Virus record (IMG/VR): IMGVR_UViG_3300024308_000188
Location: 62,001-126,000 of that record
Strand: one strand, 5' to 3'
DNA: 64,000 bases
Made by a program: the position numbers and the translations under genes. Under the pieces are notes generated by a model. The model worked only from the letters and a program-made list of their open reading frames with translations, was not told where the DNA came from and ran no database searches. Shown here piece after piece: positions 17,885-59,556 of this stretch. The stretch's first letter is position 1, and every line of letters starts with the position of its first letter.

Positions 17885-20800
17885 TTACATGCGTAAATCA
17901 TCAATTTTTGCAACAAGTTGATCTTGGTTAGTGATAACGTAACCAGCTTCTTTCAACTCTTTAAGTTTGCTCATGAATTCGCGTTTACCAGCTGCGAAAT
18001 AAATGTGCATACCAGGATGAAGCTTCCAAGTTCCACCTACACCGCCACCAGGAATTGCTTTTCCTTCAAGACGTTTCGCAAATGGGTTAGTTGCTTTGTC
18101 CACAACAATACGTAAACGGTCGTGCATCGTTACCGGATACATTTTAACCATTTTAGTATTCTTGCTTTCACGCAAACGCGCACGGAAAAAATCTTGAACA
18201 TCATTCATGATTTTCTTAGCATGACGTTGGTTAAAGAGTTGTTTAGGATCGATCTTCTTGTCACTAAACATATCGTAAACAGCAACCAAACGATTATAAG
18301 TTGGGCCATCAATTTCCAACTGTCCTTTGTCTGATTTTTCTTCAATCCAATTTAAGAAAGCGTAGTACGCAGGGAACGCTTTAAAGTCTACGTATACGAA
18401 ATCTTCAAAGTTTTTGAAGCCAAACTTCAACAAGCCATCTGCATCTGCGTCATTATTTGTAACGTGCATACACAAGAAGCCGTTATAGAAAGAAGGAATT
18501 AATTTAATCTTCTTAGGTTTAATCGCTGGAGCCGCAGGTGCAACAGGACGTTTAGGTGGAACACGACCTGAAAGTGTACCAGCAGGAACTACGCTAACGG
18601 TTGGCCGTACACGCGGAACTTTTGGAACAACTTCTACACCTTGATTTACTGGGCGTTTTTTCTCAATGTTGTCTTTGCGGATATTTGCACGTTCGCGTTC
18701 GCGTGTCTGACGACGAGCATCTTCACGTTCTTGCTTGATGCGTTGTTCCTCAGCCTGTTCTCTCTGAGCGCGAATACGATCAGCTTCTGCCTGTTGTTTA
18801 GCTGCCGCACGTTCCATCTGAAGTTTTTCAGTTTTCGTTCCCCACATTTCTGTAGGTTTAAAGAACTGATCATAAACTTTTCCGGAAACTTTTGTTGCAA
18901 TATAAACCATACTGATAGGCATCAGAACAGGAGGTATATTTTCCAGCATGTTACGTTCATGATATTTAATACGAACACTATGAATCGGTCTGCGTGGATC
19001 AGAAATCATTTCTCCTGGATTATCAGGATCAGGAATTTTCCGAGTACGTTGCAAACCAACAATTGTACCAGTACCAAAACCAGTACGAACTGGACTACCT
19101 TTCAACACTGCTTCTGCATCTTCTAAAATTTCTTCGATGCGCGTTGGAATATATTCTGACAATTTAACCAAACCAAATCCTTCTGGATCAGGAATATTTT
19201 GATTCGGCATTGTTGGAATTTGTGGCATCGTTTTGAAATCTTTTGGAATAGGTGGAATATCAAGATCCAACATTTCCGCACGAGTTGTTTTACGCATTTC
19301 CGTAAATTCGCTTGCTTCGATGTTTGCTAATAAAGCTTTTGCACCAAAGTAATCGTTTACAATACGAGTTTCACCATTTTCCGTTTCTTCTAACGTACCA
19401 CGGTAATCCTCTAATTCACAGCGTTCAAACAACAAATCCAAAGACATCTTGATTGGTTTCAAGACGTATTCGTTTAAAGGTTCATAACGTCTGTTGCCTT
19501 TTTCGTTGAAGCGAATACTGTCAACAGTTTTCCACATCAAACGAGCAACTTTACCAACTTCCAATGTACCGCCAGTCATAATCCAATCGACGTAAATAAC
19601 TTCACGCGCCATATCTCCAGGTTGACCATCAGTAAATTTTGCTGCGGCCGGATCTGGACGGAAAATACGTGCTGTACTTTGTTCGTAATCACCAGGTGAC
19701 CACGGAGTATCAACACGAATAATACGACTTGCCATTTGAAGGTTGTAACCTTCTGTAATAGCTTGCTCGTTAGCTACGAAAATTTCTACATCTTTTGATT
19801 TCATGAAGTCTTGTAAGTTTTGCTTACGTTGATCTTCTGGAATCTGACCGTGGAACATACGCGCTTTGCGTTTATACTCAGGAGGTAACGAATCGAAAAT
19901 ATATTTCGTGTTACCTGTGTAGCGGCAGAAAATAAGTACCTTACCTTTAATCTCCGGTTTCCAGTTATCCAAATCTTGATCTGGTGGCGTAGAAGTTTTC
20001 GGAGTCAATCGACGTTTTATAGTCGGTAATTCGTCTGGCCCAAGTGGAATTGGACGACGCATATACAGTTGACCTTTATATTCAACTATATCGTACTCTT
20101 TCGCTTGCATTTCACGATCCCACTGAATAATACGTCCAGTTTGATCTGCGTTTGCATCATACTTAACACTTTCAAAATGTTCACGTAAGCGTTCTATTAC
20201 CATCGAAACTTTTGATGGAACAAAATCGCCTTGTCTTACACCAGCAATAGCTGCCAACTCTTTGAAGTAAGAATCACCCCAAGGATTTGTAATTAGCTGC
20301 TCAACACGTTGGAAGTATTTTTTGTCGATAGTAGGTAACATAGAAGCATTGATAACACCACTGGCATCAACAACTTTTCCACGACCACCACCGCCACCTT
20401 CTTCGTCATCATTTTCTTCCAATTCATCATCGAAAGAGTTTTCATCATCGTCATCTTCGTCGTCATCTGCTTTGCCGATGTCGCCAGAAAGAATGATAGA
20501 TTTAACTTCGTTGATAACGTGTTCGTAAGCTTCTTGGTGTAACTTGTTACCAAGTTTATTCATTGTTTCGTCTGTAGGATCGAACAAACGAATTTGAATA
20601 AATGTATCAATTGGATTAGGTAACATGAATGCCCACTCTTTACGTTTCAGAGTGATCATGCTGCAATACTTACCAAGTTTGGTACGCATTTTACCTGGAC
20701 CATCTTCAGCAGAAAGATTGATTCCAAGTTTATCCATTTCATCAGGAGTTTTAAGTGCGTAAGCATTCATTAAGGCAGCTTGGCCAATAACATCAGCAAG

Positions 20801-23800
20801 AATACCGTGAACCAAAGTACCTGTGGCTAAACGCGCATAAGCAACGCCAGTCATAGTAAATACTTCTTTGATTACAGTATGAATTGTTGAGGTCTTGCCA
20901 CTACGCATAAATGTTTTTGCTTTATGACTTTCATCAAGCAACACATAGTTAGGATTGAATTGTTTTAAGAATTCAACACCACCACTGATTTTAATTTTGC
21001 GCGTACCAAAAGTCAAATCGAATGTATTTGTTTTACTAAGGAAGTGAATACCAGCAACAATAATTGTGTTACGTGGAGCATCCTTAATAATCTTGGTCAG
21101 TAAATCCAGACCCCAAATTTTAACGATTTTGGTTGTGATTGGAATAGTATTCCAGTTACCGTTAGTAAACTTGGCAGTATCTTCACACCAGTTTGCACAC
21201 AATCCATCTGGAGCAAGTACGAGTGGAACGAAGTGATCTGCTTTGTGTTTCTCGGCCAAACATAAAATGTCTGTAATACCAATTAATGTTTTACCGCCAC
21301 CTGGACTTACGTCGAGAATTGCATACTTCGGCGCTTTTCGTAAAAACTGGTGAGCTTTTACTTGGTGAGGAAACATTTGAGGTTTTTTGCCGTTAACAGC
21401 AACAATACCTGGAGCAACAATATCTTCAACATCAACATCAGAATCTTGTTGATAGCGGTCAAACATTTCTTCAGCACGTTCAAAATAATCCAACGCTTTT
21501 GGAACATACTTTGAAAATATGTAAGCAAGCGGTAGAACATCCGTACTGATATAGTTGAACGAAGGCAAGTTTTTGTTGTTTAAATCTTTTTCGTCACGCT
21601 TAGGATATAACAGCTCTTTCTTCGGAATCAAAGTAATATGCTTACACATATTCTTGAATAAACAACCACCAAAGTAAGTATAGATGTTATTAAACTTGGC
21701 CATAGTAGTATCAGCACTACGGAAGTTTAAATGAGCAGGATGGTCAGGCAATTCAGTTTTGACATTACTAAAGCCGACTTCATCTGCAATCATGGCGTGA
21801 AGATTTGTTCCGGGAGTACCTTCGGCATCAGCCAATGCTTTCAACAGGAAAGCAAGTACAACGTAGCCTTGACCATATAAATGGTCAGCAAGCAAAGAAC
21901 TTCCATCAATTGTATCAGGAATTAAATTGCTATACAGATCGAAGTCTAACGGTGTCCCTTCCAAGGTAAAAGAAGTGTAATTCTTTTCTTTCTTGGTTTC
22001 TTCGATCAATTGAACAATGTTTGGAACCACACCTTCTTTTGCATAAAAGCTGTAGGTTTCAAATAACTTGATAAGACGCTGGTTCAAGAAAACACGCAAA
22101 TAAATTGGAGCATCTACCAACTTTTTACGTTCTTCAGGAATGTTCAAATCTGGTGCAAGTTTTCTGATTTGCAAAATACTGTTCAAGTTTGTCAGTGTAT
22201 GCAGTGCATCAGGATCATGGCGGAACTCAGAAAGAGAAGTTAAAATATGTTTCTTCTGAGATTTTTCTCCTGGTTCTTTAAAATCAAAACCAAGGAAATC
22301 TGCCATAATCAGATCGTCCGGTGGAGTACAACCGTTCAGATCTTTTGGAACTAAGTTATCGGTTTCACTTGCGTAAAGCAGAGTGTTGTAATCCCAGTTA
22401 AATGCAATCAGCGCACCGCGCATTGATTTTAACTTAGAGTTTTTATCTGCCATTAAACCGTTTGTGCCAGCGATATTTAATTTCTCAGGATTACTTGCGG
22501 TAACAGATGCACCAGCAGGACTACCAGCAGGTAAACCTAATTCGTAAGAAAGTGACAGCATTTCTTCATATGCTTGCTCATAAGCAAGTGCATTATCATT
22601 TGAAGAATCGGCAGGACTTGGAATGTAACCGAAACGTCCATCAGGCATAATCACAAGACCATCATCATCTGATTTACTTTCAGAAACATGATAGCCAAAT
22701 TTCTCACGATAACCAGCAAGTTCTTGAATACGACTTGGTGGAATAACATACTGTGCAGTACGACGAGGATCGTAGTTAATGCCTTTAGCATGTTTTGGTT
22801 TTAAGAAAGCACCAGCCCACTGAGTAACCCAAGAGCTTAAACAATAAAGTGCTTTATCGCCAGTTTCGCTCTGACACATAAAGTTTACGATAGCGCGTTC
22901 AAAACTTAATGAAATAGATCCACCAACGCGAGGAGTAAATACAACTGTTGGTGTAATTAAAGTTTCGTTTTTCGGACGAGGAACTTCAATAGATTCTGTT
23001 CCAGAAATTTGTGCGCGAGTTTGACTTGAATTCCAAGAAGCCCAAGGCTGCATTAACTCTGGCTCTTGTTCGATAATAACCAGTACGTTCAGGAAACTCT
23101 TATACAAAGTAACTGAACCATCTAAGTTATTAAAGAAGTTTAGTGGAAAGCCAATCAGTTTACTTAATTCGTTGTTCCAACTTTTAAAATTGTAATCAAC
23201 TGGAAATTGACAAAGACGACGTTGGTGCGCGTTATCTAAAGTCAACACACCTTTATCACTACGCATAGAAACCAGTTCACAGATTTTCTGTGCAGCCGCC
23301 ATAATGCGTTGGGCAATTGGTGTTGAATAGTTTGTTTGCATCATACCTAAATGACGCGCATCATTCGGACGAGTCGGTAAAGCAGGGAATGGTTTGATGT
23401 GAAGTTTTAAACCGCCACGACCATATTGTCCACTAAACAGAATATCGTAACCGCCTTTATAACGTGAGGAAGGTTTGATAATAGTGTTTGCGGTTGGACG
23501 ATCTTCAAAAGGCATATCTTTTGGAAAGCGACTATCTTCAGCATCTTCGCTCTGTGTATCGCGCTGTGTACTCAAAGCAATTAACAAATGGCGAACCATA
23601 TCTTCGCTTGGTTCATCGTTCATTTGAATAATATTAGATGCCAATGCTTGAAGCTCAGCAGTTACTTGGCTGTCAGGCATATCGTCTAAAATATTTGCTT
23701 GCTCTAAAGCTTTACGACAGAAAGCAAAGAAATTGTTAAGGCCCATGCTGACAGAAAGTGTTTTACTTGCAGCCTCACGGAAACCGTCCATTTTGAAACC

Positions 23801-23953
23801 AGCTTCAGTAGGTCTGTTATTAACAGTGTAAAATGCTTCTGTATACAGCTTTTTTAATTTCGGATCTAACTCAACAGGAGCAACAGCTTTAGTCAACAAC
23901 TCTTCCGCTGTAGCACTCGTCGAAGTAAATTCTCCGTCGATTGTAATTGCCAT
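17885..23953 (-). CDS. Giant SNF2-family helicase/ATPase (2022 aa)
   Basis: MFPHQ, VSPGGGKT, LLDESH, ATGT, KVLIFCRY, FHGQ, EGYNLQMASRII, PWSP..EQSTARIFR; ~860-aa unrecognised N-terminal region. Confidence 0.85.
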   Translation of the reverse strand: MAITIDGEFTSTSATAEELLTKAVAPVELDPKLKKLYTEAFYTVNNRPTEAGFKMDGFREAASKTLSVSMGLNNFFAFCRKALEQANILDDMPDSQVTAELQALASNIIQMNDEPSEDMVRHLLIALSTQRDTQSEDAEDSRFPKDMPFEDRPTANTIIKPSSRYKGGYDILFSGQYGRGGLKLHIKPFPALPTRPNDARHLGMMQTNYSTPIAQRIMAAAQKICELVSMRSDKGVLTLDNAHQRRLCQFPVDYNFKSWNNELSKLIGFPLNFFNNLDGSVTLYKSFLNVLVIIEQEPELMQPWASWNSSQTRAQISGTESIEVPRPKNETLITPTVVFTPRVGGSISLSFERAIVNFMCQSETGDKALYCLSSWVTQWAGAFLKPKHAKGINYDPRRTAQYVIPPSRIQELAGYREKFGYHVSESKSDDDGLVIMPDGRFGYIPSPADSSNDNALAYEQAYEEMLSLSYELGLPAGSPAGASVTASNPEKLNIAGTNGLMADKNSKLKSMRGALIAFNWDYNTLLYASETDNLVPKDLNGCTPPDDLIMADFLGFDFKEPGEKSQKKHILTSLSEFRHDPDALHTLTNLNSILQIRKLAPDLNIPEERKKLVDAPIYLRVFLNQRLIKLFETYSFYAKEGVVPNIVQLIEETKKEKNYTSFTLEGTPLDFDLYSNLIPDTIDGSSLLADHLYGQGYVVLAFLLKALADAEGTPGTNLHAMIADEVGFSNVKTELPDHPAHLNFRSADTTMAKFNNIYTYFGGCLFKNMCKHITLIPKKELLYPKRDEKDLNNKNLPSFNYISTDVLPLAYIFSKYVPKALDYFERAEEMFDRYQQDSDVDVEDIVAPGIVAVNGKKPQMFPHQVKAHQFLRKAPKYAILDVSPGGGKTLIGITDILCLAEKHKADHFVPLVLAPDGLCANWCEDTAKFTNGNWNTIPITTKIVKIWGLDLLTKIIKDAPRNTIIVAGIHFLSKTNTFDLTFGTRKIKISGGVEFLKQFNPNYVLLDESHKAKTFMRSGKTSTIHTVIKEVFTMTGVAYARLATGTLVHGILADVIGQAALMNAYALKTPDEMDKLGINLSAEDGPGKMRTKLGKYCSMITLKRKEWAFMLPNPIDTFIQIRLFDPTDETMNKLGNKLHQEAYEHVINEVKSIILSGDIGKADDDEDDDDENSFDDELEENDDEEGGGGGRGKVVDASGVINASMLPTIDKKYFQRVEQLITNPWGDSYFKELAAIAGVRQGDFVPSKVSMVIERLREHFESVKYDANADQTGRIIQWDREMQAKEYDIVEYKGQLYMRRPIPLGPDELPTIKRRLTPKTSTPPDQDLDNWKPEIKGKVLIFCRYTGNTKYIFDSLPPEYKRKARMFHGQIPEDQRKQNLQDFMKSKDVEIFVANEQAITEGYNLQMASRIIRVDTPWSPGDYEQSTARIFRPDPAAAKFTDGQPGDMAREVIYVDWIMTGGTLEVGKVARLMWKTVDSIRFNEKGNRRYEPLNEYVLKPIKMSLDLLFERCELEDYRGTLEETENGETRIVNDYFGAKALLANIEASEFTEMRKTTRAEMLDLDIPPIPKDFKTMPQIPTMPNQNIPDPEGFGLVKLSEYIPTRIEEILEDAEAVLKGSPVRTGFGTGTIVGLQRTRKIPDPDNPGEMISDPRRPIHSVRIKYHERNMLENIPPVLMPISMVYIATKVSGKVYDQFFKPTEMWGTKTEKLQMERAAAKQQAEADRIRAQREQAEEQRIKQEREDARRQTRERERANIRKDNIEKKRPVNQGVEVVPKVPRVRPTVSVVPAGTLSGRVPPKRPVAPAAPAIKPKKIKLIPSFYNGFLCMHVTNNDADADGLLKFGFKNFEDFVYVDFKAFPAYYAFLNWIEEKSDKGQLEIDGPTYNRLVAVYDMFSDKKIDPKQLFNQRHAKKIMNDVQDFFRARLRESKNTKMVKMYPVTMHDRLRIVVDKATNPFAKRLEGKAIPGGGVGGTWKLHPGMHIYFAAGKREFMSKLKELKEAGYVITNQDQLVAKIDDLRM

Positions 23954-43309: not shown

Positions 43310-44539
43310 TTAACGAATCAACTTTTGTATTGTGGATTCGCAAGCCTTAGTTACATCGCTTGGCAATTTTTTACCTTGCAGATGCGCTGTCATTGTTTCA
43401 GCGAAGAATTCACGTACATTGGTAAGGGCATATTCAGAACCAACATCGTTTACTTGATCGCTAATATCTTGATGCTCAGGCCACAACTCTTCGAGTGCAT
43501 CACGATTGTTCTGAACCAGCATGTCAACGTCATTACGATCAAGACGATGAACACGCTTCATATAAGAATAAATTTCTTTAATCAAGGTTACTTGATTTTC
43601 GTCAGCCATTTCTTTCATGAACGCATTAATTGCGCCATCGTAGCCTTGAATATCTTTTAACAGTGTTTTCAGATCATCCGAATCGAATGACTGGCGTTTA
43701 ATACGCTTACCATAAACTCCGGCCCATTTAGATTTTAAATGATCTGGAACTTGTCGGAACCAAACACCGTGGCAGAATTCGTGGGTAAGTACGTATTCCA
43801 GATATTGACGATCATCGAAATTAATTCCGTTGATAACAATGAAATCTGTTTTGCCACCTTCTTTTGTACGCTTGTAAGTAAATGTTCCGGCATACTTACT
43901 TACTTTAGTTCGTAACTCTATATGGCTAAAGTTATCTAACCAAGAAGTCATGCGGTGTTTTTTGAACAATTTGAAAACTGTTTCAGAACAACTTTTAAGA
44001 AGATCAAAATGTTGTTTAGTAAACTTTTCACGGTATAAACGAACTTCACCAATATCAGGCAAAGTCAACTTTTTAATAAAAGGTTCTATCTTAACCCCGA
44101 ACACGCTGCCGATAGCTGGCTTTTTGCCTAAGTTAGCAATAACATCTTCAGGTTTAAATTCTTTTTGGTTGTCAGAGTCATCACGTTCAACCCCATCTTC
44201 TAAAAGAATTCGGTTACGGCCTATATAAAGACCAAGAACATTTTTAGTGCCAATCTTTACAATCAAGTGATCGTCACTTTCGTAAGCAACTTGGCTGGAC
44301 TCAACAACTGTTTTAGAATCAGAGTCAGATTTTCTTGAAGATTTTTTGGCCTTATCAATAGCGCCTTCAGCTATCTTCTTTGCCATTTTCTTTTTGGTCT
44401 TTTCAATGTCACCTAATTCCACTTTGGTAACAGCAACCTTCTTTTTCTTTACCACAATTTCTTCTACTTTACCTTTATTGGCCTTAATCTTAGTTTTAGG
44501 TTTCTTTCCGGCTTTTAATCCACAAATTACACTTGTCAT
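43310..44539 (-). CDS. Zincin-type metallopeptidase-like protein with Lys-rich N-terminus
   Basis: LTHEFCHGVW (HExxH) and distal YALTNVREFFAE supplying the likely third ligand. Confidence 0.65.
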   Translation of the reverse strand: MTSVICGLKAGKKPKTKIKANKGKVEEIVVKKKKVAVTKVELGDIEKTKKKMAKKIAEGAIDKAKKSSRKSDSDSKTVVESSQVAYESDDHLIVKIGTKNVLGLYIGRNRILLEDGVERDDSDNQKEFKPEDVIANLGKKPAIGSVFGVKIEPFIKKLTLPDIGEVRLYREKFTKQHFDLLKSCSETVFKLFKKHRMTSWLDNFSHIELRTKVSKYAGTFTYKRTKEGGKTDFIVINGINFDDRQYLEYVLTHEFCHGVWFRQVPDHLKSKWAGVYGKRIKRQSFDSDDLKTLLKDIQGYDGAINAFMKEMADENQVTLIKEIYSYMKRVHRLDRNDVDMLVQNNRDALEELWPEHQDISDQVNDVGSEYALTNVREFFAETMTAHLQGKKLPSDVTKACESTIQKLIR

Positions 44540-44582
44540 ATATTTCTCCTGATTGGAATTTAAAAATTATGGGCATTACGGC

Positions 44583-45017
44583 CTAAATTTGGTTTTTAAG
44601 AAAAGAGACTTTAATGGACTGTATCTTATCCATCATTTCTTTTGAAACCATAGCAAATTCTGTGTTCAATCCAAAAACATACCAGCCACTATCTTTAATT
44701 GGATGCTCAGTAAATACTACAAATTGAAATTTACCTCGTTTCTCAGAAGCTGTTCTATATTGGAATTTTTTCTTTAGTGGTATTCGTTTGGAATGTGACT
44801 GATTTACGTATTCTATAAAACTATCTTGAACTTGCCTATCAAGATATTTACAGTATAGGTATATCCTATTAGTCAATCCAATGCAAAATAATTCTGGATG
44901 ATCATTAAAAAGTTGGTTGAATTCTTCAAATTCAACACGTTTTTTACCTTTTGGTCTGGCATCATGGACAAGCTTTTGAAGCTCGATTAATTGCTTACAG
45001 GTTTCGTCATTGTACAT
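44583..45017 (-). CDS. Hypothetical protein
   Basis: 144-aa ORF with AAGGA SD. Confidence 0.65.
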   Translation of the reverse strand: MYNDETCKQLIELQKLVHDARPKGKKRVEFEEFNQLFNDHPELFCIGLTNRIYLYCKYLDRQVQDSFIEYVNQSHSKRIPLKKKFQYRTASEKRGKFQFVVFTEHPIKDSGWYVFGLNTEFAMVSKEMMDKIQSIKVSFLKNQI

Positions 45018-45039
45018 AAGTTTTCCTTATTGAAGAAGC

Positions 45040-45660
45040 TGCGAAGGCATGGCTGCGGGTTGTCGGTGTCCGCGAAAGTGGGGGGGGTGGCGCGGCGGAA
45101 CCGGAAAAAGGATCCTGGAAAAGATCAATAACCCAGTTAGTGTGTTAGCTTTTTCTTTTGATTTTAAGGTTGTACGAAGCGGAGCGAAGTACAGCTCTTA
45201 ATCTACGTAGTAGATTTAAGATCTTGATCCAATTTCCCCATGCCCAGATCCCCAACAAACAATTAATAAACAGATCTTTGCTTTTCTACTGATCTCATTT
45301 TCCCCCCCAAAAAAAAAAAAAAAAAAAAAAGATCTGGCCTGTTAATTTGACGAAGGCAAATTTTAGGCAGACCTCCGCCTTTTTATGATCTGTTCCACTG
45401 ATCGCTGTGGGCTAATTCAAATGCCTTGAGATCTTTTTGATCTTTTAATTTATTCTAGTGGCCTGTTGTCTGTTGGGGCATTTAGTAATTTTTAAAGAAT
45501 TTTAGGAATCCATGATTCCAAAGTTGGTGTTCACTTCGCTCACACCAACTATAAACCTTCTTTAATTACTAACTGATCAACTAACGATCCTAAGCAATTA
45601 ACTCATTTCCAAAAGCCCAATTGATCCAGCTGTTTTTATTTAATTTACAGTATTACTTTA
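45040..45660. other. Putative replication-origin-like non-coding region
   Basis: 15 GATC sites in 45111-45626; oriC 13-mer-like words; AT-rich blocks; G8, C7 and A22 tracts; several hairpins; no ORF. Confidence 0.55.
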
Positions 45661-45854
45661 GCAGACCCTACTTTCTGACTACCAGACTTTAGTACACTTA
45701 GAAGCGTTAAAACCCTATTTAGATGCAACGACAAAAAATGGTGTTTTTACCCAAAATAGCTAAAACATAAATTTAGCCTTTTTCTTTAAAATGGGGACAG
45801 AATTTCAGTAAAATACATCAAAAATTGGTAGGAAAATTCACGAATTTTGGACGT

Positions 45855-45883
45855 AAAAAAGGGCAGCTTTTTAAGGCCGCCCT
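45855..45883 (-). terminator. Intrinsic terminator
   Basis: AGGGCGGC...GCTGCCCT plus T6 on the minus strand. Confidence 0.7.
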
Positions 45884-45890
45884 ACAAAAC

Positions 45891-46100
45891 TTATTTAGTG
45901 CTTTCAAATTTAGCGCGAAGTTTAGCACCTACTTGTTTCATTAGTGCCTCTACTTTCTCACCTTCTTCTTTTTCAACAGCAGTCTGAATCTGTTCACCTA
46001 AATCACCGGAAAGAAACGGCATGATTGTACTCAACATAAGACTGCGGCCAGTTTTCTTCTTACCACCTTTCTTTTTACTTACCGAAACAAAGACTTTCAT
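45891..46100 (-). CDS. Small hypothetical protein
   Basis: GAGGT SD, biased codons, followed by a terminator. Confidence 0.65.
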   Translation of the reverse strand: MKVFVSVSKKKGGKKKTGRSLMLSTIMPFLSGDLGEQIQTAVEKEEGEKVEALMKQVGAKLRAKFESTK

Positions 46101-46108
46101 TAGTCACC

Positions 46109-47266
46109 TCAATAAAGTTTATAGCTTTTAAAAATGTTGTAAGCAGCTTCAGATCTTTGAACAGCACGAGTAGTTGCCATCCATTCCCAAACCTGACGAT
46201 CTGCCGTTGACTTGCGCGGTACATCATTTACTTTCAAGACTAAATTACGTTCGGGAACAATAATAAAATCTTCTGATCTGAATAAACCTATACGCGCAGG
46301 AAGAACAACAGTAATATCACCTATTGTTATTTCCTGTTCGTAGTTTACCATTTCATTTTCTTGGCTAATATTAGCCTGAATGCTATCCTCACTTAATTTA
46401 AACATTACTATCGCATGAGTAAAATTTGCTACATCACGCACACTTACTTGAATACTTCTTCCGCGATGCTGATCCAAATCGCTATACTTTAAAGGAGTTT
46501 TTGATGTTCCTACGTATAAACGATTATTGGACGGCAACACATCTGTATTAGCACGAACGCTATACGAAGCGCTGATAAAATATTTTGGAACCAGTATTTC
46601 AAAAAGTACATAGCCATCAGATTCTTGTTGAATAAAGTTTACTGGAGTGCTGTTATCAAAAGCGTAACCTTTGATAGCAAGTGCATCATAACTTGTCATC
46701 AATGATTGACGGAAATTCGTGAATTCAAAAGCTGGTTGGCGTCCTTCACGATAACAGATACCACAATCAACACCTGTTCCAGATGTCATAGCATCTTGGA
46801 AGGTAAACACATCATCTGGATTTTCAGCTTTTATTTCCTCATGTTCTTCACGCAACATATCACCAATTTCAACACGTTTGTTATTGAGTGGTTTTGGAGC
46901 ATGACGCTCTACCTCACTTTCTCCAAACAAACTTGATGAACCAAGATCCAAAACCATAGTTGCTTTTTTACCTTCTGGCTGTGAATCTGGAATTGGAGTC
47001 TGCGTGTATTCATCTGACTCTATATCAACCAAACTTGTATCAAGTGCGGCCACACTATCTTCAGCAATATGTTTGCTGCAAGTACAATAACGGCCAGCTC
47101 GAACACGCTTAGCCACAATAGCCACAACTTTATCTACGTTAAGCGCGTTCTCAATTTGATTTTGGAATACAGGCAAAGTTTCATTTAAGCGCTTTTGAGC
47201 GCGTTCATGTGTAAAGTTTTTGGCTCTACGTTTGCCCTTCTTTTGTGCTGTATTAAGCCAACTCAT
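46109..47266 (-). CDS. Hypothetical protein with CxC...CxxC motif, possibly head-completion/neck type
   Basis: RYCTC...DCGICYREG; beta-rich C-terminus. Confidence 0.5.
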   Translation of the reverse strand: MSWLNTAQKKGKRRAKNFTHERAQKRLNETLPVFQNQIENALNVDKVVAIVAKRVRAGRYCTCSKHIAEDSVAALDTSLVDIESDEYTQTPIPDSQPEGKKATMVLDLGSSSLFGESEVERHAPKPLNNKRVEIGDMLREEHEEIKAENPDDVFTFQDAMTSGTGVDCGICYREGRQPAFEFTNFRQSLMTSYDALAIKGYAFDNSTPVNFIQQESDGYVLFEILVPKYFISASYSVRANTDVLPSNNRLYVGTSKTPLKYSDLDQHRGRSIQVSVRDVANFTHAIVMFKLSEDSIQANISQENEMVNYEQEITIGDITVVLPARIGLFRSEDFIIVPERNLVLKVNDVPRKSTADRQVWEWMATTRAVQRSEAAYNIFKSYKLY

Positions 47267-49258: not shown

Positions 49259-49296
49259 AAAAAAAGGGGAGCCATTAAGGTTCCCCTTTTATTTTT
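49259..49296. terminator. Bidirectional terminator between convergent genes
   Basis: A7-GGGGAGCC...GGTTCCCC-TTTTATTTTT. Confidence 0.8.
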
Positions 49297-50362
49297 GTTC
49301 AATCATTCGTAAATTTTCAGGCTTTATAAATTTCCCACCATATTCCTTTATTTCATCTTTCAAAGCACGTAACATTTTCTTAGGCATTACGTCAGGATCT
49401 AATTTTACAATCTTACCATCCTTTCCTTTCTTACGTGGTAACTTAAATCCTCGATACTCAAAAGAAATCTGCATGTTGTTGCACATCCATTCAAGCTTTT
49501 CTGCCATTGCTTTACCTGCCGCATCATTATCCGGTAGCCAACAAAGTAATTCAATATCAAGCCTTTCTACCAAACGTAATTTCTTTCCATTTATATTTTG
49601 AGAACCTAATACCGCAAGTGCAGGAATACCAGCCATTATTAAACGCAGTGCATCCCTTGGGCCTTCAACCAAAACTACATAACGATATTTCATTTTGGCA
49701 AGCATTGCTTTAACAAAGTTGAAAGGAAATAATCCACTTTCTTTAACCCAATCACCTGCACTACTCACATAACTTAATTTACCTTCTTTCTTTTCTTCAA
49801 GTGCCTCTATTACACCTTTAATTTCTTTACCTACTTTTACAGGCAATATACATTTGAACTCGCTATATTTATTTACGGCAGCAAGTCCATTCAAATTTTT
49901 AATTAGCCATCCCGGATAACCACGCCATTCATTATAAATAGGCCAATCAATTGTTGAAGGATCTCCCAAACTTTTTAACATTCCTTCCATGTCAGTATTT
50001 TTGTTGGTCAGCATTCCTCCTTCCATTTCACGAAGTTTCTTATTCAGGCCGTTCGTGTCAACACTTCCGGTTTTTGGAATAAGATTTGATATTTTCCTTA
50101 ATCCAGCTTTTTCAGCAAACTTGTTCCAATCTCCACTTTCAGGACAACCAAAACAGTTGAATGTTCCCATTGGGTAGCGAGATCCTTCACTTACTACAAC
50201 ACCGCAACTTGGAGTCCTTTCATCGTGAAATGGACAACATACCATTATGCGATCTTGTGTTGTTTTTTGCGGCCCATCTAATTTTTGTAATTCAGTTGTT
50301 ATGATCGACTGCATATCTTCTGCAACAGCCGATGTTTTCTTTGGTGATTTCTTAACCGCCAT
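49289..50362 (-). CDS. DnaG-type DNA primase
   Basis: CHC2 zinc finger CCPFHDERTPSC...FNCFGC; TOPRIM LVEGPRD and PDNDAAG. Confidence 0.9.
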   Translation of the reverse strand: MAVKKSPKKTSAVAEDMQSIITTELQKLDGPQKTTQDRIMVCCPFHDERTPSCGVVVSEGSRYPMGTFNCFGCPESGDWNKFAEKAGLRKISNLIPKTGSVDTNGLNKKLREMEGGMLTNKNTDMEGMLKSLGDPSTIDWPIYNEWRGYPGWLIKNLNGLAAVNKYSEFKCILPVKVGKEIKGVIEALEEKKEGKLSYVSSAGDWVKESGLFPFNFVKAMLAKMKYRYVVLVEGPRDALRLIMAGIPALAVLGSQNINGKKLRLVERLDIELLCWLPDNDAAGKAMAEKLEWMCNNMQISFEYRGFKLPRKKGKDGKIVKLDPDVMPKKMLRALKDEIKEYGGKFIKPENLRMIEQK

Positions 50363-54500: not shown

Positions 54501-55520
54501 GTGAGTAAAGAAAATTTAACAGGCGGTCAAATACAAGAAATAATGGACACGCTTTTATATAAAGCACTTGAACCAATAGTGATCCATACAAATGTCTTTG
54601 ACAGTCAACTTATCTATTTACTAACCGCTGTTATAAAAAACAAAAAACGAAAGTTTTGTGCTCTTGAAAGATCTCAGACCATAGACATTTTGGCACAAGC
54701 CATAGTTTGTCCTGACCGCATTCGTAAGTTCGAGCTGATCAAAAAACTTAAGATCGAAAGATCTTTTGTTCATGTTTTCATAAAGAAATTTTTAGCAGAA
54801 TACAAAGACGTATATATGGAACTTTATTTCCATTATATGAGCGAACCGAAGCGAAGAAATTTTTATCGGGATCGGATGGTTCCGTACAAAGCTCTTTTAG
54901 GTGCAGATAGTATACAAGATGTTTTTGTGGCTATCACCCAACCTTCTGAGTATCTGGCCTTATTCTACAAATATTTCAACAGTGTTGTTGAGCAGTATCA
55001 TAAGTTTTGTTATACACATGCAAAACATTTGATTGATACAAACACTGGAAATAACTACGACTACAAAGATGTGGTGCAAAACTTTTTGCGTAATGTTGTG
55101 GTAGCACTAAACAAATATGACAGCAGCAAAGGCGCTTTAACGTCATATATAAAGTATTGGATTCTCAACAGTCTTACTTGTGCAAGTTCTGAACATGAAT
55201 ATGGAATAGCTTATGTTATCCCACAGAACCACAAGAAAACTTTGAGTGGTGGTCATAGTTCAAATGTAAACTTTTCAACTTCAATGGACACCTTACTTTC
55301 TCAGGGTGAAGATGAAGATGGAAATTTACATGAATTACTTACGGCAGAAACAGAAGATCTTTCTGATGAACATGCTGTCGATCATGAACTAAGGCGATTA
55401 TATCTCATGGCAAAAAGAGCAGATCCTTTTGGATTGGCCAGACTTACGCTTGAGATACCAGAGGTATTTACTGAGGCAGAGCTAGAGTTAATGGAACGGC
55501 ATACTCTGTCTAAACTGTAA
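54501..55520 (+). CDS. Phage RNA polymerase sigma factor (sigma70 family, region 2)
   Basis: DVVQNFLRNVVVALNKYDSSKGALTSYIKYWI parallels region 2.2-2.3 (DLIQ..N.GL..A..KFD..KG..FSTYA.WWI). Confidence 0.7.
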   Translation: MSKENLTGGQIQEIMDTLLYKALEPIVIHTNVFDSQLIYLLTAVIKNKKRKFCALERSQTIDILAQAIVCPDRIRKFELIKKLKIERSFVHVFIKKFLAEYKDVYMELYFHYMSEPKRRNFYRDRMVPYKALLGADSIQDVFVAITQPSEYLALFYKYFNSVVEQYHKFCYTHAKHLIDTNTGNNYDYKDVVQNFLRNVVVALNKYDSSKGALTSYIKYWILNSLTCASSEHEYGIAYVIPQNHKKTLSGGHSSNVNFSTSMDTLLSQGEDEDGNLHELLTAETEDLSDEHAVDHELRRLYLMAKRADPFGLARLTLEIPEVFTEAELELMERHTLSKL

Positions 55521-56673: not shown

Positions 56674-59556
56674 ATGGCTAAAAAGAAAAAGTTAGACATT
56701 GATGACGACGTTGTTGTAGAAGAACCAAAGAAAAAGGGTAAATCAAAAGGCAAGTCTGCTAAAGAAATTGTAGACTCTGCTATTGAAGATGCTCGCGGTT
56801 ATTCTCCAGCTGACGACATTGATGATTTGCTTGATAGTGTTGAAAAGAAATATGGCCTTTCCAGCAGTTTGGTTGACCGTGATGAAAAAAGATTATCCAC
56901 AGGGCTGTTGGCTCTTGATCTATTGCTTAACGGCGGTATTGTTGGTGGCGGTTGGTACACTATTTATGGCGGTGAGCAAAGCTGTAAATCGACATTAACA
57001 ATGACTCTTCTCTGCATGATTCAGAATGCTATTGATGAATTAAACAGAAAAATTGCTGCCAGTATTTTTGATTACGAAGGATCTACTGATATTGAATATA
57101 TTGGTAACATGATGGAAGCACTTGGATTAAAATCTGATGCTACTACAATATTCGGAATCAAAGATGACGACACTGGTTCTTGGTTGATTAAACCAAAAAT
57201 TCGTTATTACATGCCTGATGTTGGTGAAGATTTTTATCGTTACCAAGCAAAACTTCGTCGCGCACTTCCTGATGTACAAAAAATCGGTGACAAGTATTGG
57301 TATGTTTACGAACATACTCAAGAAAATAAGAAAAAGTTTGCTGGAAAATACGATGTTAAGTATTTGACTAAAACAAATAAAATTCGTATTCCTGCTCCAG
57401 ATGGCTTTATGCAAGCAGTATCAATCGTTGATAGTTATCCGGCCATGTTGCCTGAAGGCTTAGATGATGATGATCGTAATGAAGCTATGGCAGAACAAGC
57501 ACGTATGCACGCTGCTGGTATTAAAAAAGTACGAAGCGGTATGCGTAAAAAACGTATGACTGTTTTTGGTGTAAACCAATTACGTTTACGTCCTGCTGTT
57601 ATGCACGGTAATCCTGAGTATGAGCCTTCCGGGGAAGCGCTCAAATTTTTCTGTATGACTGGAGATACTTTCATTCATTCAGAGAAAGGTATGCTAACTG
57701 CCTTTGAATATTATCAAGAATGCAGCAAAGCTAAAAAGCTTCCAAAACTTCTTGGTTATCAAGGCATCGAACGTCCTACAATATTCGACACTACTGGTCG
57801 TAGTTCTATACTTGAGTTAAAAACTGAATACGGATTTTCAATAGCTGGAAAGCCAAGTCATCGAACAATGATGATTAAGTCTGGCGGCTGGAAATACGAC
57901 TGGAAGAAATTGAATCAAGTTGTAGGCGCTACAGATTATTATGTTCCAGTGAAAGTTGGCTCTGATGTTTGGGCTAAAAATCCTGCAACATTTGATTATG
58001 AGCATTATTCAAAACAGAGTAATGAGCAACAAGTAGTTAGCATTCCAAATGTTCTCACACAAGATCTTGCATTCGTTCTTGGAGCTTTATCTGGTGATGG
58101 ACACGTTACTGGTGAAAACGGTCTTGTTCAGTTTATTTCTGGTGATGTAGATTTCTTTGCTGAGTATTGTGATCGTATCTACGATGTGTTTGGAATTGAA
58201 CCTACTATTAAGACTATAGGTAACGCACAAGAGGCTCGAATTTATTCGACTGAGGTTGCGGGATTCCTTTCATATCTAGGTGCTACTGGTTATTCTCGAA
58301 GCAAAGAAGTTCCACGTTGCATTCGTATTTCACCTAAGAAATTCTTTGTTGAATTCTTACGTGGATATTTGAATGCAGATGGAAATGTTTCTTCAAAAGA
58401 AGTAAGTGCTAATAGTAATTCAAAAGCCTTACTTAATGTAATACAACAGCTTTGCTTGAATGCCGGAATTATTACAAAGCTTTCAATGAGCGAAACTAAG
58501 TATCATAAAGAGTCTAAGTTGAATGAACTGCATCGCATTAGCTTTGTTTCTTCATCAGTGAACGACTTGAACTTAATGATGTCTGAGTTCGGCGGCTTAT
58601 GTGAACGCAAACAGAAGCTGTTAGATGACACTATTACCAAAGTAAATAATGGTAATCAGTTTTATAACATTGATGTATTGCCATTTGATTTGATTAGCTA
58701 TGATTCTGTCCGTAGTGACTTTAAACTTAAGTCACATATTGAATCTGCAAAAGGCAGACGCAAACTATATCGTTTGTCTGACTTCGATTCATCTTGGGTA
58801 GATGAAGCAAATCAGATCATTGCTTCTTGTCGTACAGAACAAGAACGTAGTCGGAATAGTCGGATATTAGCTGACTTGATTGAGTTCTTGAACTATACAA
58901 CAAAAAACAATTTGCTTTGGACTAAAGTTGTCGATGTTGATCGTAACCGATCTGAAGAAATGACTTACGATGCAAACATGCCAGACACCCATACAATTAT
59001 CACTAACGGAATTGTTAGCCATAACTCCGATGTGAGGATAAAATCTACTTCTCGTGGATCTGCTCCATACGGTTTTGTTCTTGACAAAGGCATCATGGAA
59101 GAAAATTCTGTGACTGTTGAAGGCGGTAAAGATATTTATCGTTTCATCTGTTTGCGTACTGTCAAAAACAAACTCGGTGGTATTCCTAACCGTGAAGTTT
59201 GGGCGCGTGTTTGGGTTACTGATGGTGATGGTCGTGCTCGTGGATTCGATCCAGTTTTTGATACCTTCGAGTATTTAAAGCAACTTGGTTATGTTGATGG
59301 AACACGGAACAATCTAAAGTTCCATCCAGATGTTCCACTGCATGGTGCTAAAAAATTAAGCTTTGAAGATTTCAAAGTTCTTGTTCTTGGTAGTAAAAAA
59401 CAAATCACCGAAGTTTGTGAGCGAGTTGGTTTGAAGAAAGCTGGAAACATTCGTACATGGTGTTCTAAACATTGTGCAAGTGGAAAAGGCCCGAAACGCT
59501 ACAAAGATCAAATCGTCAAACGCAGTAAAGAAAAAATCGATACTGATGACGAATAA
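56674..59556 (+). CDS. recA: RecA/UvsX-like recombinase interrupted by an intein (~502 aa after splicing)
   Basis: LSTGLLALDLLLNGG, YGGEQSCKST, IVDSYPAM, AEQARM, NQLR, GEALKFF|SDVR, TVKNK. Confidence 0.9.
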   Translation: MAKKKKLDIDDDVVVEEPKKKGKSKGKSAKEIVDSAIEDARGYSPADDIDDLLDSVEKKYGLSSSLVDRDEKRLSTGLLALDLLLNGGIVGGGWYTIYGGEQSCKSTLTMTLLCMIQNAIDELNRKIAASIFDYEGSTDIEYIGNMMEALGLKSDATTIFGIKDDDTGSWLIKPKIRYYMPDVGEDFYRYQAKLRRALPDVQKIGDKYWYVYEHTQENKKKFAGKYDVKYLTKTNKIRIPAPDGFMQAVSIVDSYPAMLPEGLDDDDRNEAMAEQARMHAAGIKKVRSGMRKKRMTVFGVNQLRLRPAVMHGNPEYEPSGEALKFFCMTGDTFIHSEKGMLTAFEYYQECSKAKKLPKLLGYQGIERPTIFDTTGRSSILELKTEYGFSIAGKPSHRTMMIKSGGWKYDWKKLNQVVGATDYYVPVKVGSDVWAKNPATFDYEHYSKQSNEQQVVSIPNVLTQDLAFVLGALSGDGHVTGENGLVQFISGDVDFFAEYCDRIYDVFGIEPTIKTIGNAQEARIYSTEVAGFLSYLGATGYSRSKEVPRCIRISPKKFFVEFLRGYLNADGNVSSKEVSANSNSKALLNVIQQLCLNAGIITKLSMSETKYHKESKLNELHRISFVSSSVNDLNLMMSEFGGLCERKQKLLDDTITKVNNGNQFYNIDVLPFDLISYDSVRSDFKLKSHIESAKGRRKLYRLSDFDSSWVDEANQIIASCRTEQERSRNSRILADLIEFLNYTTKNNLLWTKVVDVDRNRSEEMTYDANMPDTHTIITNGIVSHNSDVRIKSTSRGSAPYGFVLDKGIMEENSVTVEGGKDIYRFICLRTVKNKLGGIPNREVWARVWVTDGDGRARGFDPVFDTFEYLKQLGYVDGTRNNLKFHPDVPLHGAKKLSFEDFKVLVLGSKKQITEVCERVGLKKAGNIRTWCSKHCASGKGPKRYKDQIVKRSKEKIDTDDE
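57652..59025 (+). mobile_element. Intein with LAGLIDADG homing endonuclease (458 aa)
   Basis: Starts CMTGDTFI, ends IITNGIVSHN followed by Ser; blocks LAFVLGALSGDGH and EFLRGYLNADG. Confidence 0.95.

What the first reader, a model, noticed from the sequence alone, without database searches (positions are those of the whole stretch)
45111..45652. GATC-dense, oriC-like non-coding region
Seen: 15 GATC in 516 bp (about 2 expected), four as AGATCT. Two words are one mismatch from the E. coli 13-mer GATCTnTTnTTTT (45273 GATCTTTGCTTTT; 45439 GATCTTTTAATTT). A TACTGTAAAT motif at 45643 points into the region with no ORF to serve, and no consensus DnaA box is present. Inference: a phage origin, possibly transcription-primed and sensitive to Dam/SeqA-type methylation.
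Basis: partly seen in the sequence, partly recalled or inferred. Interest (0 to 1): 0.65.

Follow-up and report, generated by a model that had tools for sequence, protein, structure and literature searches.

The report
Candidate jumbo-phage replication origin
The GATC-rich stretch is real and lies in the largest gene-free gap of an uncultivated jumbo phage; the gap keeps the same layout in related phages, looks most like a replication origin with hairpin priming signals on both DNA strands, and this function is not proven.

Summary
There are 15 GATC at 45111-45626 (about 2.7 expected, the densest stretch of the 214-kb genome). Four are AGATCT, two words are one mismatch from the oriC 13-mer, and there is no DnaA box.

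The element is larger than reported. It fills the 873-bp ORF-free gap 45018-45890 inside the replication gene module.

The gap holds:
- a recurring phage promoter-like motif, TACTGTAAAT;
- two inverted arms around a GATC-rich core that carries the genome's only long homopolymer (C7A22);
- the genome's most stable GC-rich block.

Each arm carries a hairpin tipped by a DNA "mini-hairpin" motif (GCGNAGC type). This motif is known from primase sites in phage G4 and in RSF1010 ssiA. It sits on the gene-sense strand in one arm and on the opposite strand in the other.

Four lineages at 62-70% protein identity keep this layout with covarying stems (one is cut short by its contig end); a fifth at 42% keeps part of it. 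Complete relatives encode a Dam-family methylase.

Best reading (about 0.45): a phage origin with strand-specific priming hairpins, probably activated by transcription and perhaps modulated by methylation. It is not oriC-like in the DnaA sense.

GC skew gives no independent support, and no replication data exist. The main rival is a structured leader or regulatory region of the 45-kb operon.

The parts
45850..45883 (-). Intrinsic terminator of the upstream 69-aa gene (45891-46100). It marks the start of the gap in the direction of transcription.
   Evidence: 8-bp stem with 6 GC pairs, followed by a T-run. The same element is found in L004, L046, L047 and L048.
45643..45652 (-). Phage promoter-like motif TACTGTAAAT reading into the element. 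The next ORF is 626 nt downstream.
   Evidence: 23 ACTGTAAA sites in the genome, about 13 of them 5-100 nt upstream of co-oriented ORFs. The motif is invariant and in the same position in L004, L047 and L048, and L047 carries the full consensus with the downstream GTATA. The phage encodes sigma70-region-2 proteins.
45522..45550 (-). Left-arm hairpin B: 9-bp stem, GA/GA internal loop, and a GCGAAGT mini-hairpin tip on the gene-sense (window minus) strand.
   Evidence: DNA fold z = -5.2. In L004, L047 and L048 the stems differ while the tip ACGAAGT is kept; L046 has CCGAAGG. RNAalifold counts compensatory pairs.
45505..45519 (.). Small palindromic hairpin GGAATC-N3-GATTCC next to hairpin B.
   Evidence: The core AATCAATGATTC is conserved in L004 and L047.
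45465..45478 (.). Inverted-repeat motif, left copy (CCCCAACAGACAAC on the sense strand).
   Evidence: I14, 13 nt, 92% complementary to 45250-45262. In L048 all copies carry a different sequence but stay complementary.
45263..45464 (.). Central core between the two arms, with 7 of the 15 GATC and the homopolymer.
   Evidence: Relatives have a GATC-rich core with a pyrimidine tract in the same place.
45302..45330 (+). C7A22 homopolymer tract (T22G7 on the sense strand). It is the only A/T run of 9 or more in the 214-kb genome.
   Evidence: T21 in G001, T of at least 21 in L046, (CTTTT)13 in L004, pyrimidine tracts in L047 and L048, and about A37 in NCTB. Assemblies break here.
45250..45262 (.). 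Inverted-repeat motif, right copy (CCCCAACAAACAA on the window plus strand).
   Evidence: This copy is duplicated in L004, L047 and L048.
45200..45216 (+). Right-arm small hairpin AATCT-ACGTAGT-AGATT, with its tip motif on the window plus (antisense) strand.
   Evidence: Relatives carry TGCAA-GCGNNAGC-TTGCA at the matching place.
45168..45196 (+). Right-arm hairpin A: 8-bp stem (two G-T pairs on the plus strand), GAA/GAA internal loop, and a GCGGAGC mini-hairpin tip on the window plus (antisense) strand.
   Evidence: L004, L047 and L048 have two copies each, with different stems and tips GCGAAGC, GCGTAAGC or variants, all with the motif on the antisense strand.
45030..45117 (.). GC-rich block with a G8 run, directly upstream of the 144-aa gene.
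   Evidence: the most stable 80-bp duplex of the whole genome starts at 45038. A GC-rich block lies at the same place in L004, L047, L048, L057 and L058. The G8 run is replaced by mixed sequence in G001 and in run X5.
45111..45626 (.). GATC cluster (15 sites) spread over both arms and the core.

Best explanation
The 873-bp gap 45018-45890 is the phage's origin of vegetative replication, or its main initiation zone.

Proposed mechanism (inferred):
1. Transcription from the phage promoter at 45652, and/or an unknown initiator bound to the inverted CCCCAACAGACAAC-type motifs, opens the A/T- and GATC-rich core.
2. Opening exposes single strands, and the hairpins fold. Hairpin B folds on the gene-sense strand in the left arm. 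Hairpin A and its small neighbour fold on the opposite strand in the right arm.
3. Their mini-hairpin tips act as strand-specific priming signals for the phage's DnaG-type primase (49289-50362). Because the motif-bearing strand is the template, the two arms would start DNA synthesis outward in opposite directions.
4. The GATC cluster, methylated by the lineage's Dam-family enzyme, would couple firing or re-firing to methylation state.

Shown here: the anatomy, its uniqueness in the genome, its conservation with covariation, the strand asymmetry of the motif, and the promoter-like motif. Inferred: every functional step above.
For: Genome-wide extremes at this one locus:
- highest GATC density;
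- largest ORF-free stretch;
- the only long homopolymers;
- the most stable GC-rich block;
- 3 of the 10 stem-flanked mini-hairpin motifs of G000, and 6 of 9 in G002, lie within the 0.4-0.6 kb of the gap.

Conservation: L046, L047, L048 and L004 (62-70% protein identity) keep the layout, with L046 cut short by its contig end. L058 (42%) keeps part of it (GATC cluster, antisense GCGAAGC, GC-rich block) but has no TACTGTAAAT by the pattern. Stems and inverted-repeat motifs change while complementarity is kept.

Strand asymmetry: the tip motif is on the sense strand in the left arm (6 of 6 instances) and on the antisense strand in the right arms (10 of 11). Fisher P = 6e-4, but the lineages are not independent.

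Precedent: the same motif class marks primase start regions in phages G4, St-1 and alpha3 and in RSF1010 ssiA. RSF1010 carries its two ssi signals on complementary strands (PMC13037366, PMC8567376).

Setting: the gap lies among the primase, RuvC, clamp loader, helicases, DNA polymerase, SbcC-like and UvsX-like genes. A promoter-like motif reads into it. G001 and G002 encode a Dam-family methylase.
Against: - There are no replication data of any kind. Only assembled contigs were available, so there is no depth profile and no read ends.
- GC skew follows the coding strand and gives no independent support.
- No initiator was identified. The conserved 385-aa neighbour has no informative fold match.
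- The gap is AT-rich only at about the top 0.4-1% of the genome, not its extreme.
- The hairpin motifs were not found in the more distant cultured relatives JA11, fHe-Yen9-02, NCTB and Yoloswag.
- The GATC cluster is absent from L057, NCTB and Yoloswag.
- GNRA-like tips are also common in RNA, and the region is probably transcribed, so an RNA function is not excluded.
Confidence: 0.45

Rival explanations
1. The gap is a transcribed regulatory leader. It would be the promoter region plus a roughly 630-nt structured 5' leader, or a separate non-coding RNA, of the 45-kb minus-strand operon. Its hairpins would act in RNA, for example in processive antitermination, RNA stability or timing control, and the GATC sites would tune promoter or regulator binding. 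This reading can coexist with an origin.
For: A conserved promoter-like motif lies 626-870 nt upstream of the first gene in the window, L004, L047 and L048. RNAalifold recovers hairpin B and a long-range pairing of the inverted-repeat motifs. That pairing has compensatory changes and a G-U kept in all four sequences in the sense orientation. The gap directly precedes a very long co-directional gene block. The phage has its own sigma factors.
Against: In a sense transcript the right-arm hairpins would carry pyrimidine loops, the complement of the conserved GNA/GNNA tips. The same motif on opposite strands in the two arms therefore fits DNA better than a single RNA. No Rfam family matches. The overall covariation term of the consensus fold is not favourable. 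No antisense promoter was found. A T22 run inside a leader would favour slippage or termination.
Confidence: 0.25
2. The gap is a Dam-controlled DNA-processing site other than an origin. It could be a packaging start (pac-like) or genome-end region, as in phage P1, whose pac site is regulated by clustered GATC methylation.
For: The region has a dense GATC cluster and the lineage encodes a Dam-family methylase. The assemblies of G001, NCTB and L046, and the contigs of runs X2 and X4, all end in this gap.
Against: All these breaks fall exactly at the A/T homopolymer, and the 127-bp end repeat of G001 looks like an assembler overlap. They are best read as assembly artefacts. The large terminase gene is about 62 kb away in G001. 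There is no repeated TGATCA/G hexamer pattern of the P1 kind, and the flanks of the GATC sites share nothing beyond A/T. The gap sits in the replication module, not the packaging module.
Confidence: 0.1
3. The hairpins are N4-type single-stranded hairpin promoters for a phage RNA polymerase. They would drive divergent early transcription, and the GATC and homopolymer features would be incidental.
For: N4 virion RNA polymerase promoters are hairpins with GGA or GAA triloop mini-hairpins such as GCGGAGC (PMC13037366). Hairpin A carries exactly GCGGAGC on the template strand of the downstream operon. Only 2-3 such hairpins exist per genome, as in N4.
Against: No T7-like RNA polymerase domain was found in G000, G001 or G002, although the control search also stayed silent. 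None of the scanned ORFs of more than about 780 aa in G001 is an RNA polymerase by PHROGs. The hairpins here have an extra internal loop and longer stems than N4 promoters. Hairpin B would drive transcription into a terminator and convergent genes.
Confidence: 0.07
4. The gap is an accumulation of low-complexity and palindromic sequence in an intergenic spacer, with no specific function. It could be the remnant of a mobile element with inverted ends.
For: The two arms are inverted copies, as in the ends of a transposon. The homopolymer and G/C runs vary between near-identical strains.
Against: The syntenic position and modular layout are kept over 30-58% protein divergence. Stems and repeats covary, and there is no second copy anywhere in three genomes.
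Confidence: 0.03

Closest known systems
E. coli oriC (DnaA-dependent, Dam/SeqA-controlled origin; from established knowledge)
   Same: A dense GATC cluster, often as (A)GATCT. GATCT-plus-T-rich words close to the 13-mer consensus. Non-coding.
   Different: No DnaA box here or in relatives. The phage has no dnaA or seqA (for SeqA). oriC has no strand-specific hairpin arms, no long homopolymer and no extreme GC-rich block.
IncQ plasmid RSF1010 oriV with ssiA and ssiB (PMC8567376, PMC13037366)
   Same: Hairpin priming signals occur once on each complementary strand. The hairpin is tipped by a GAA mini-hairpin (CCGAAGG in ssiA, and the same word in L046 hairpin B). GC-rich and AT-rich segments lie side by side. 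Opening by an initiator or helicase is needed to expose the hairpins.
   Different: There are no 20-bp direct iterons; inverted motifs take their place. The phage primase is DnaG-type (Zn-ribbon plus Toprim), not RepB'. No RepC or RepA relatives were sought. RSF1010 has no GATC cluster or promoter of this kind. Sequence similarity is limited to the short tip.
Complementary-strand origins of phages G4, St-1 and alpha3 (DnaG-dependent ssi; PMC13037366)
   Same: Mini-hairpin consensus GCGNAGC or GCGNNAGC at the tip of a longer hairpin on the template strand. GCGTTAGC of St-1 and alpha3 recurs in the small hairpins of L004 and L047. A DnaG-type primase is encoded 4 kb away.
   Different: Those are single-stranded DNA phages with one origin strand. 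Here the genome is a roughly 320-kb double-stranded phage, with the signals on both strands around a duplex core.
Transcription-activated or R-loop-primed origins: T4 oriF/oriG, the T7 primary origin, ColE1 (from established knowledge)
   Same: A phage promoter reads into an easily opened, A/T-rich non-coding stretch. A priming site could be exposed on the displaced strand: hairpin B lies 80-100 nt downstream of the promoter on the non-template strand.
   Different: No RNA-DNA hybrid or primer end has been shown. The sense transcript across the T22 run would be U-rich, which gives a weak hybrid. The element is much larger and is organised as a palindrome.
Phage P1 pac site and P1 oriR (Dam-dependent; from established knowledge)
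   Same: Clustered GATC in a phage that encodes its own Dam-type methylase, with methylation as a licensing signal.
   Different: There is no TGATCA/G hexamer array, the site is not next to terminase genes, and there are no RepA-type iterons.
Phage N4 early hairpin promoters (PMC13037366)
   Same: A GCGGAGC or GAA-loop mini-hairpin on the template strand, with very few copies per genome.
   Different: No virion RNA polymerase was found. The hairpins carry an extra internal loop and lie on both strands.

Membership tests
oriC-type (DnaA/Dam/SeqA) origin | Cluster of DnaA boxes (TTWTNCACA) | tested here: not met
   No match in the gap, even allowing one mismatch to TTATCCACA. None in the gaps of nine relatives, apart from one lone TTTTGCACA in NCTB.
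oriC-type (DnaA/Dam/SeqA) origin | GATC cluster far above background | tested here: met
   15 against 2.7 expected, the genome maximum. Also enriched in L046, L048 and L058, weakly in L047 and L004, and not in L057, NCTB or Yoloswag.
oriC-type (DnaA/Dam/SeqA) origin | AT-rich 13-mer unwinding element (GATCTnTTnTTTT repeats) | tested here: inconclusive
   Three matches with at most one mismatch, out of 19 genome-wide, lie in the gap. They are scattered and not tandem, and one is just the T-run. Duplex stability is only in the lowest 0.4-1% of the genome.
oriC-type (DnaA/Dam/SeqA) origin | SeqA or Dam available to read and write GATC methylation | tested here: inconclusive
   G001, G002 and all relatives checked carry a Dam-family methylase. 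It lies outside the 214-kb fragment that holds the window, and its specificity was not tested. No SeqA in the phage. The host is unknown.
IncQ/RSF1010-type oriV | Two hairpin ssi signals, one on each complementary strand | tested here: met
   Structural criterion only. Stem-flanked mini-hairpin motifs lie on the sense strand in the left arm and the antisense strand in the right arm, in all lineages with both arms. Priming itself cannot be tested here.
IncQ/RSF1010-type oriV | Direct iterons bound by RepC | tested here: not met
   The repeat search finds no family of three or more direct repeats of about 20 bp. Instead there is one inverted motif pair in the window, and one left copy plus two right copies in relatives.
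IncQ/RSF1010-type oriV | RepB'-type primase, RepA helicase and RepC initiator | not tested
   Only the DnaG-type primase (PF01807 plus PF13155) was seen, 4 kb away. RepB', RepA and RepC families were not searched.
G4-type DnaG-dependent priming signal | Mini-hairpin consensus GCGNAGC or GCGNNAGC at a hairpin on the template strand | tested here: met
   GCGAAGT and GCGGAGC in the window. GCGAAGC, GCGTAAGC, GCGTTAGC, GCGCAAGC, ACGAAGT and CCGAAGG in relatives. Consensus as given in PMC13037366.
G4-type DnaG-dependent priming signal | Primer synthesis by primase on the SSB-coated single strand | not testable with these tools
   Needs an in vitro priming assay.
Transcription-primed phage or plasmid origin (T4 oriF/G, T7, ColE1) | Promoter directed into the origin | tested here: met
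   TACTGTAAAT at 45643-45652 on the minus strand. The motif class precedes about 13 genes. It is conserved in position in L004, L047 and L048. Promoter activity itself has not been shown.
Transcription-primed phage or plasmid origin (T4 oriF/G, T7, ColE1) | Persistent RNA-DNA hybrid used as a primer | not testable with these tools
   No raw RNA reads were available. Runs X5 and X6 are contigs of uncertain RNA or DNA nature.
P1-type pac site | Site within or next to the terminase genes, with a cleavage terminus | tested here: not met
   The large terminase gene is about 62 kb away in G001. Contig ends at the homopolymer are explained as assembly breaks. True termini cannot be tested without raw reads.
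N4-type hairpin promoter | Cognate single-subunit virion RNA polymerase | tested here: inconclusive
   No PF00940 match, but the control search was silent too. The ORFs over about 780 aa that were scanned (not all of those listed) are helicase, tail, terminase or unknown.

The most novel reading that the evidence does not exclude
This would be the first defined origin for the Lu11/PaBG-like ('Lupandier'-related) jumbo phages. It would be a palindromically organised, double-stranded DNA phage origin. G4/ssi-type DNA mini-hairpins on opposite strands would start the two diverging leading strands. Opening would be driven by a phage-sigma-dependent promoter, and firing would be licensed by phage Dam methylation of a GATC cluster. 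That would carry the 'single-strand initiation signal' logic of small plasmids and single-stranded DNA phages into a 320-kb virus.
Probability: 0.3. Interest if true: 0.7.

Novelty: new variant of a known kind. Interest (0 to 1): 0.55.

Why it matters
No origin was mentioned in the family paper I searched (PaBG, PMC7412058). A full-text search for jumbo phage, origin of replication and GATC found nothing relevant.

If this gap is the origin, it gives three things:
- a compact, testable cis element (under 900 bp) for building shuttle or reporter replicons and for engineering these phages;
- a concrete substrate for the phage's DnaG-type primase;
- an example of ssi-type hairpin priming signals working in a large double-stranded DNA phage, possibly coupled to phage-encoded Dam methylation.

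There is also a practical point. The homopolymer in this element repeatedly breaks metagenomic assemblies of these phages.

Tried and rejected
- blastn of 44000-47000 against cultured phages found no match.
- The metagenome scan with the 385-aa protein returned only the window's own contig. The viral-contig scans gave only G001 and G002.
- GC skew was rejected as evidence. The cumulative minima lie 5-6 kb from the gap in G000, G001 and G002, at the gene-strand switch, and minus-strand genes to the right of the gap still show coding-strand skew.
- Read laying had only Logan contigs, so it gave no depth or read ends. It showed contigs breaking at the homopolymer and a strain variant of the G8 block.
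- Rfam had nothing near any gathering score.
- AlphaFold plus Foldseek of the 385-aa neighbour, tried as a possible initiator, gave a beta-sandwich with no significant PDB match. This was not pursued.
- The pattern scan TTGCAAGCNNNNGCTTGCA in viral contigs returned 77 unrelated palindromes and was uninformative.
- No longer consensus was seen around the GATC sites, only a preference for A before and T after the site. An iteron reading of AGATCT was therefore dropped.

Full report
**Setting**

The window is bases 62001-126000 of a 214,526-bp virus contig with 37.9% GC, classed as linear and about 85% complete. The contig comes from a subsurface metagenome.

Its genes mark it as a jumbo myovirus distantly related to Pseudomonas phages Lu11 and PaBG, phage NCTB, Erwinia phage Yoloswag, Dickeya phage JA11 and Yersinia phage fHe-Yen9-02. 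The clamp loader is 33-38% identical to theirs and the 385-aa protein 35-40%.

The finding lies in an 873-bp ORF-free gap, 45018-45890, between two minus-strand genes. On one side are the 69-aa (45891-46100) and 385-aa genes, and on the other the 144-aa gene that starts at 45017. Around the gap are RuvC, a DnaG-type primase, the clamp loader, helicases, a DNA polymerase, and SbcC-like and UvsX-like genes.

**The observation**

- There are 15 GATC between 45111 and 45626, against 2.7 expected from the genome's own frequency (P = 1.7e-7). This is the densest 516-bp stretch of the genome, and the next best window has 10 and is coding.
- Four of the sites are AGATCT.
- The two 13-mer-like words are as stated. 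A third, exact match is simply GATC followed by the T-run on the other strand.
- There is no DnaA box.
- GATC is mildly over-represented genome-wide: 1063 observed against 742-930 expected.

**What else is in the gap**

The gap is extreme for this genome in several other ways.
- It is the largest stretch free of ORFs of 90 aa or more.
- It holds the only A/T homopolymer of 9 or more (A22, preceded by C7) and the only G/C runs of 7 or more.
- It holds the most stable 80-bp duplex of the genome, a GC-rich block starting at 45038.

Read in the direction of the genes (window minus strand), the order of parts is:
1. the terminator of the 69-aa gene;
2. about 200 nt of AT-rich spacer;
3. the TACTGTAAAT motif (45652-45643);
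4. hairpin B (45550-45522);
5. a small palindrome (45519-45505);
6. the motif CCCCAACAGACAAC;
7. a 200-bp core with 7 GATC and the T22G7 tract;
8. the inverted copy of the CCCCAAC motif;
9. a small hairpin (45216-45200);
10. hairpin A (45196-45168);
11. two more GATC;
12. the GC-rich block;
13. the 144-aa gene.

The two arms are inverted copies of one module: large hairpin, small hairpin, spacer, CCCCAAC motif.

**The hairpins**

Hairpin B reads: 9-bp stem, GA, GCGAAGT, GA, stem, on the gene-sense strand. Hairpin A reads: 8-bp stem, GAA, GCGGAGC, GAA, stem, on the opposite strand. Its neighbour reads AATCT-ACGTAGT-AGATT, also on the opposite strand.

These tips match the DNA 'mini-hairpin' consensus GCGNAGC/GCGNNAGC. 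A 2026 review (PMC13037366) places this consensus in three settings:
- the primase start region of the complementary-strand origins of phages G4, St-1 and alpha3;
- ssiA of the RSF1010 origin (CCGAAGG);
- the hairpin promoters of phage N4 (GCGGAGC).

RSF1010 carries its two ssi signals once each on complementary strands, and they are exposed after the origin is opened (PMC8567376).

A genome-wide scan for such tips flanked by at least 5 perfect pairs gave these counts:

| Genome | Size | Hits genome-wide | Hits in the gap |
|---|---|---|---|
| G000 (the window's contig) | 214 kb | 10 | 3 |
| G002 | 287 kb | 9 | 6 |

**Relatives**

The relatives came from three sources.
- Viral contigs: G001 is 319.5 kb, complete, and 98-99% identical to the window's contig. 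G002 is 286.6 kb, and its 385-aa protein is 62% identical.
- Logan contigs reached through a protein search: L046 (69%), L047 (65%), L048 (63%), L057 (44%) and L058 (42%).
- Cultured phages.

The gene order primase, RuvC, 385-aa gene, small gene, gap, next genes is kept throughout.

L004 (the G002 locus), L047 and L048 keep the whole layout. It comprises:
- the terminator;
- an invariant TACTGTAAAT 80-100 nt before hairpin B;
- hairpin B with a different stem and the tip ACGAAGT;
- the AATCAATGATTC palindrome;
- the left CCCCAAC-type motif;
- a GATC-rich core with a pyrimidine tract, which is (CTTTT)13 in L004;
- one or two right modules, each with the inverted motif, a hairpin 'stem-GA-tip-GA-stem' and a TGCAA-GCGNNAGC-TTGCA hairpin;
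- a GC-rich block.

These parts are shown.

Three further points come from the relatives.
- Stems differ between lineages and between copies, yet they stay paired.
- In L048 all three copies of the inverted motif carry a different sequence (GTCTGAGTAA type) and are still complementary.
- L046 has the T-run at the same spot as the window, and its contig ends there.

Across lineages, the tip motif lies on the sense strand in the left arm (6 of 6 instances) and on the antisense strand in the right arms (10 of 11). Fisher P is 6e-4, with the caveat that the lineages are related.

L058 keeps a GATC cluster (10 sites, P = 2.5e-4), an antisense GCGAAGC and the GC-rich block. L057 keeps the gap and the GC-rich block but has only one GATC.

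The cultured relatives keep a 430-580-bp gap, but differ in detail.
- NCTB has an AACTGTAAAT, three direct repeats and a run of about A37.
- fHe-Yen9-02 has short direct repeats.
- None of them shows the hairpin motifs or a significant GATC excess.

**Methylation**

G001 and G002 encode a 290-aa D12-class methylase. It scores at or near the TIGR00571 (Dam) threshold. Its best solved relatives are T4 Dam, E. coli Dam and DpnM, all specific for GATC.

The gene lies in the part of the genome missing from the window's contig. The same family is present in NCTB, JA11, Yoloswag and fHe-Yen9-02, so its presence does not predict the GATC cluster. Its specificity has not been tested. The phage encodes no SeqA, and the host is unknown.

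**Promoter**

ACTGTAAA occurs 23 times in the contig. About 13 of these sites lie 5-100 nt upstream of a co-oriented ORF, usually followed by (A)GTRTA after 5-6 nt. The phage encodes two proteins with sigma-70 region 2, as reported for PaBG (PMC7412058).

The site in the gap has only the upstream half of the motif in the window, but the full motif in L047. It most likely drives transcription through the element into the 45-kb minus-strand gene block.

**Interpretation**

The best-supported reading is an origin of replication. The case rests on these features together:
- an opening zone (core plus A/T tract) flanked by inverted motifs;
- strand-specific hairpin priming signals in each arm that would start synthesis outward in both directions;
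- a promoter that can open or activate the region;
- a GC-rich boundary;
- GATC methylation as a modulator.

This combines features known from RSF1010 oriV, from G4-type priming sites and from transcription-activated origins (T4, T7, ColE1; the last three from established knowledge). It is not a member of the oriC type, because the DnaA boxes are absent.

Every functional step is inferred. I put the origin reading at about 0.45.

The main rival, at about 0.25, is a structured RNA leader or regulatory region of the long operon. The two readings can coexist. RNAalifold finds the same local hairpins and a long-range pairing with compensatory changes, but a single RNA would not explain why the same tip motif sits on opposite strands.

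The other readings are less likely.
- A Dam-controlled packaging site: the terminase is 62 kb away, and the contig ends at the homopolymer are best explained as assembly breaks.
- N4-type promoters: no matching polymerase was found.
- Junk or a mobile-element remnant: this does not fit the conservation.

**What did not help**

- GC skew follows the coding strand gene by gene.
- The public runs are kept only as contigs, so they give no depth and no read ends.
- The 385-aa neighbour has no informative fold match.
- Rfam is silent.

Noticed in passing
window-wide, e.g. 42323(-), 47944(+), 50406(-), 54457(+): A phage-specific promoter-like motif, (A/T)ACTGTAAAT-N5-6-(A)GTRTA, lies 5-100 nt upstream of about 13 ORFs and is always co-oriented with them. 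A protein with sigma-70 region 2 is encoded at 54501-55520, and a second one lies outside the window.
   Followed up: partly
window 46109-47266 (-): A conserved 385-aa protein sits next to the gap in every relative. It has four invariant cysteines (C61, C63, C168, C171) and a C-terminal beta-sandwich. It has no Pfam family and no significant PDB fold match.
   Followed up: partly
window 56674-59556 (+): The UvsX-like recombinase ORF is 960 aa long and contains an endonuclease-like insert (residues about 461-655). This could be an intein or a homing endonuclease.
   Followed up: no
window 45080-45087 and 45302-45308: The G8 and C7 runs of the window are replaced by mixed sequence in the 98%-identical genome G001 and in a contig of run X5. 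The A/T run is 22 in the window and 21 in G001. These runs are either hypervariable or sequencing errors.
   Followed up: partly
window 45309-45341; L003 end; L046 end; L010/L011 junction: Independent assemblies all break at the A/T homopolymer of this gap: G001, phage NCTB LT598654, a Logan contig of L046, and contigs of runs X2 and X4. This is a practical trap when judging the ends and completeness of these phages.
   Followed up: yes
L004 8105-8122 and 8282-8299: The two TGCAA...TTGCA hairpins of G002 carry the central 8-mer GCGTTAGC in opposite orientation. The loop is flipped inside an unchanged stem.
   Followed up: no
G002 108,397-110,001: G002 has an even larger ORF-free stretch (1,605 bp), about 15 kb from its copy of the gap. 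It was not examined.
   Followed up: no
window 17885-23953 (-): A 2,022-aa ORF matches a giant phage 'DNA helicase' family end to end (phrog_21391). It is the largest gene in the window.
   Followed up: no
whole contig: GATC is over-represented genome-wide (1063 observed against 742 by base composition and 930 by Markov expectation), so there is no avoidance of GATC-specific restriction. NCTB and L057 are GATC-poor (about 2 per kb).
   Followed up: partly
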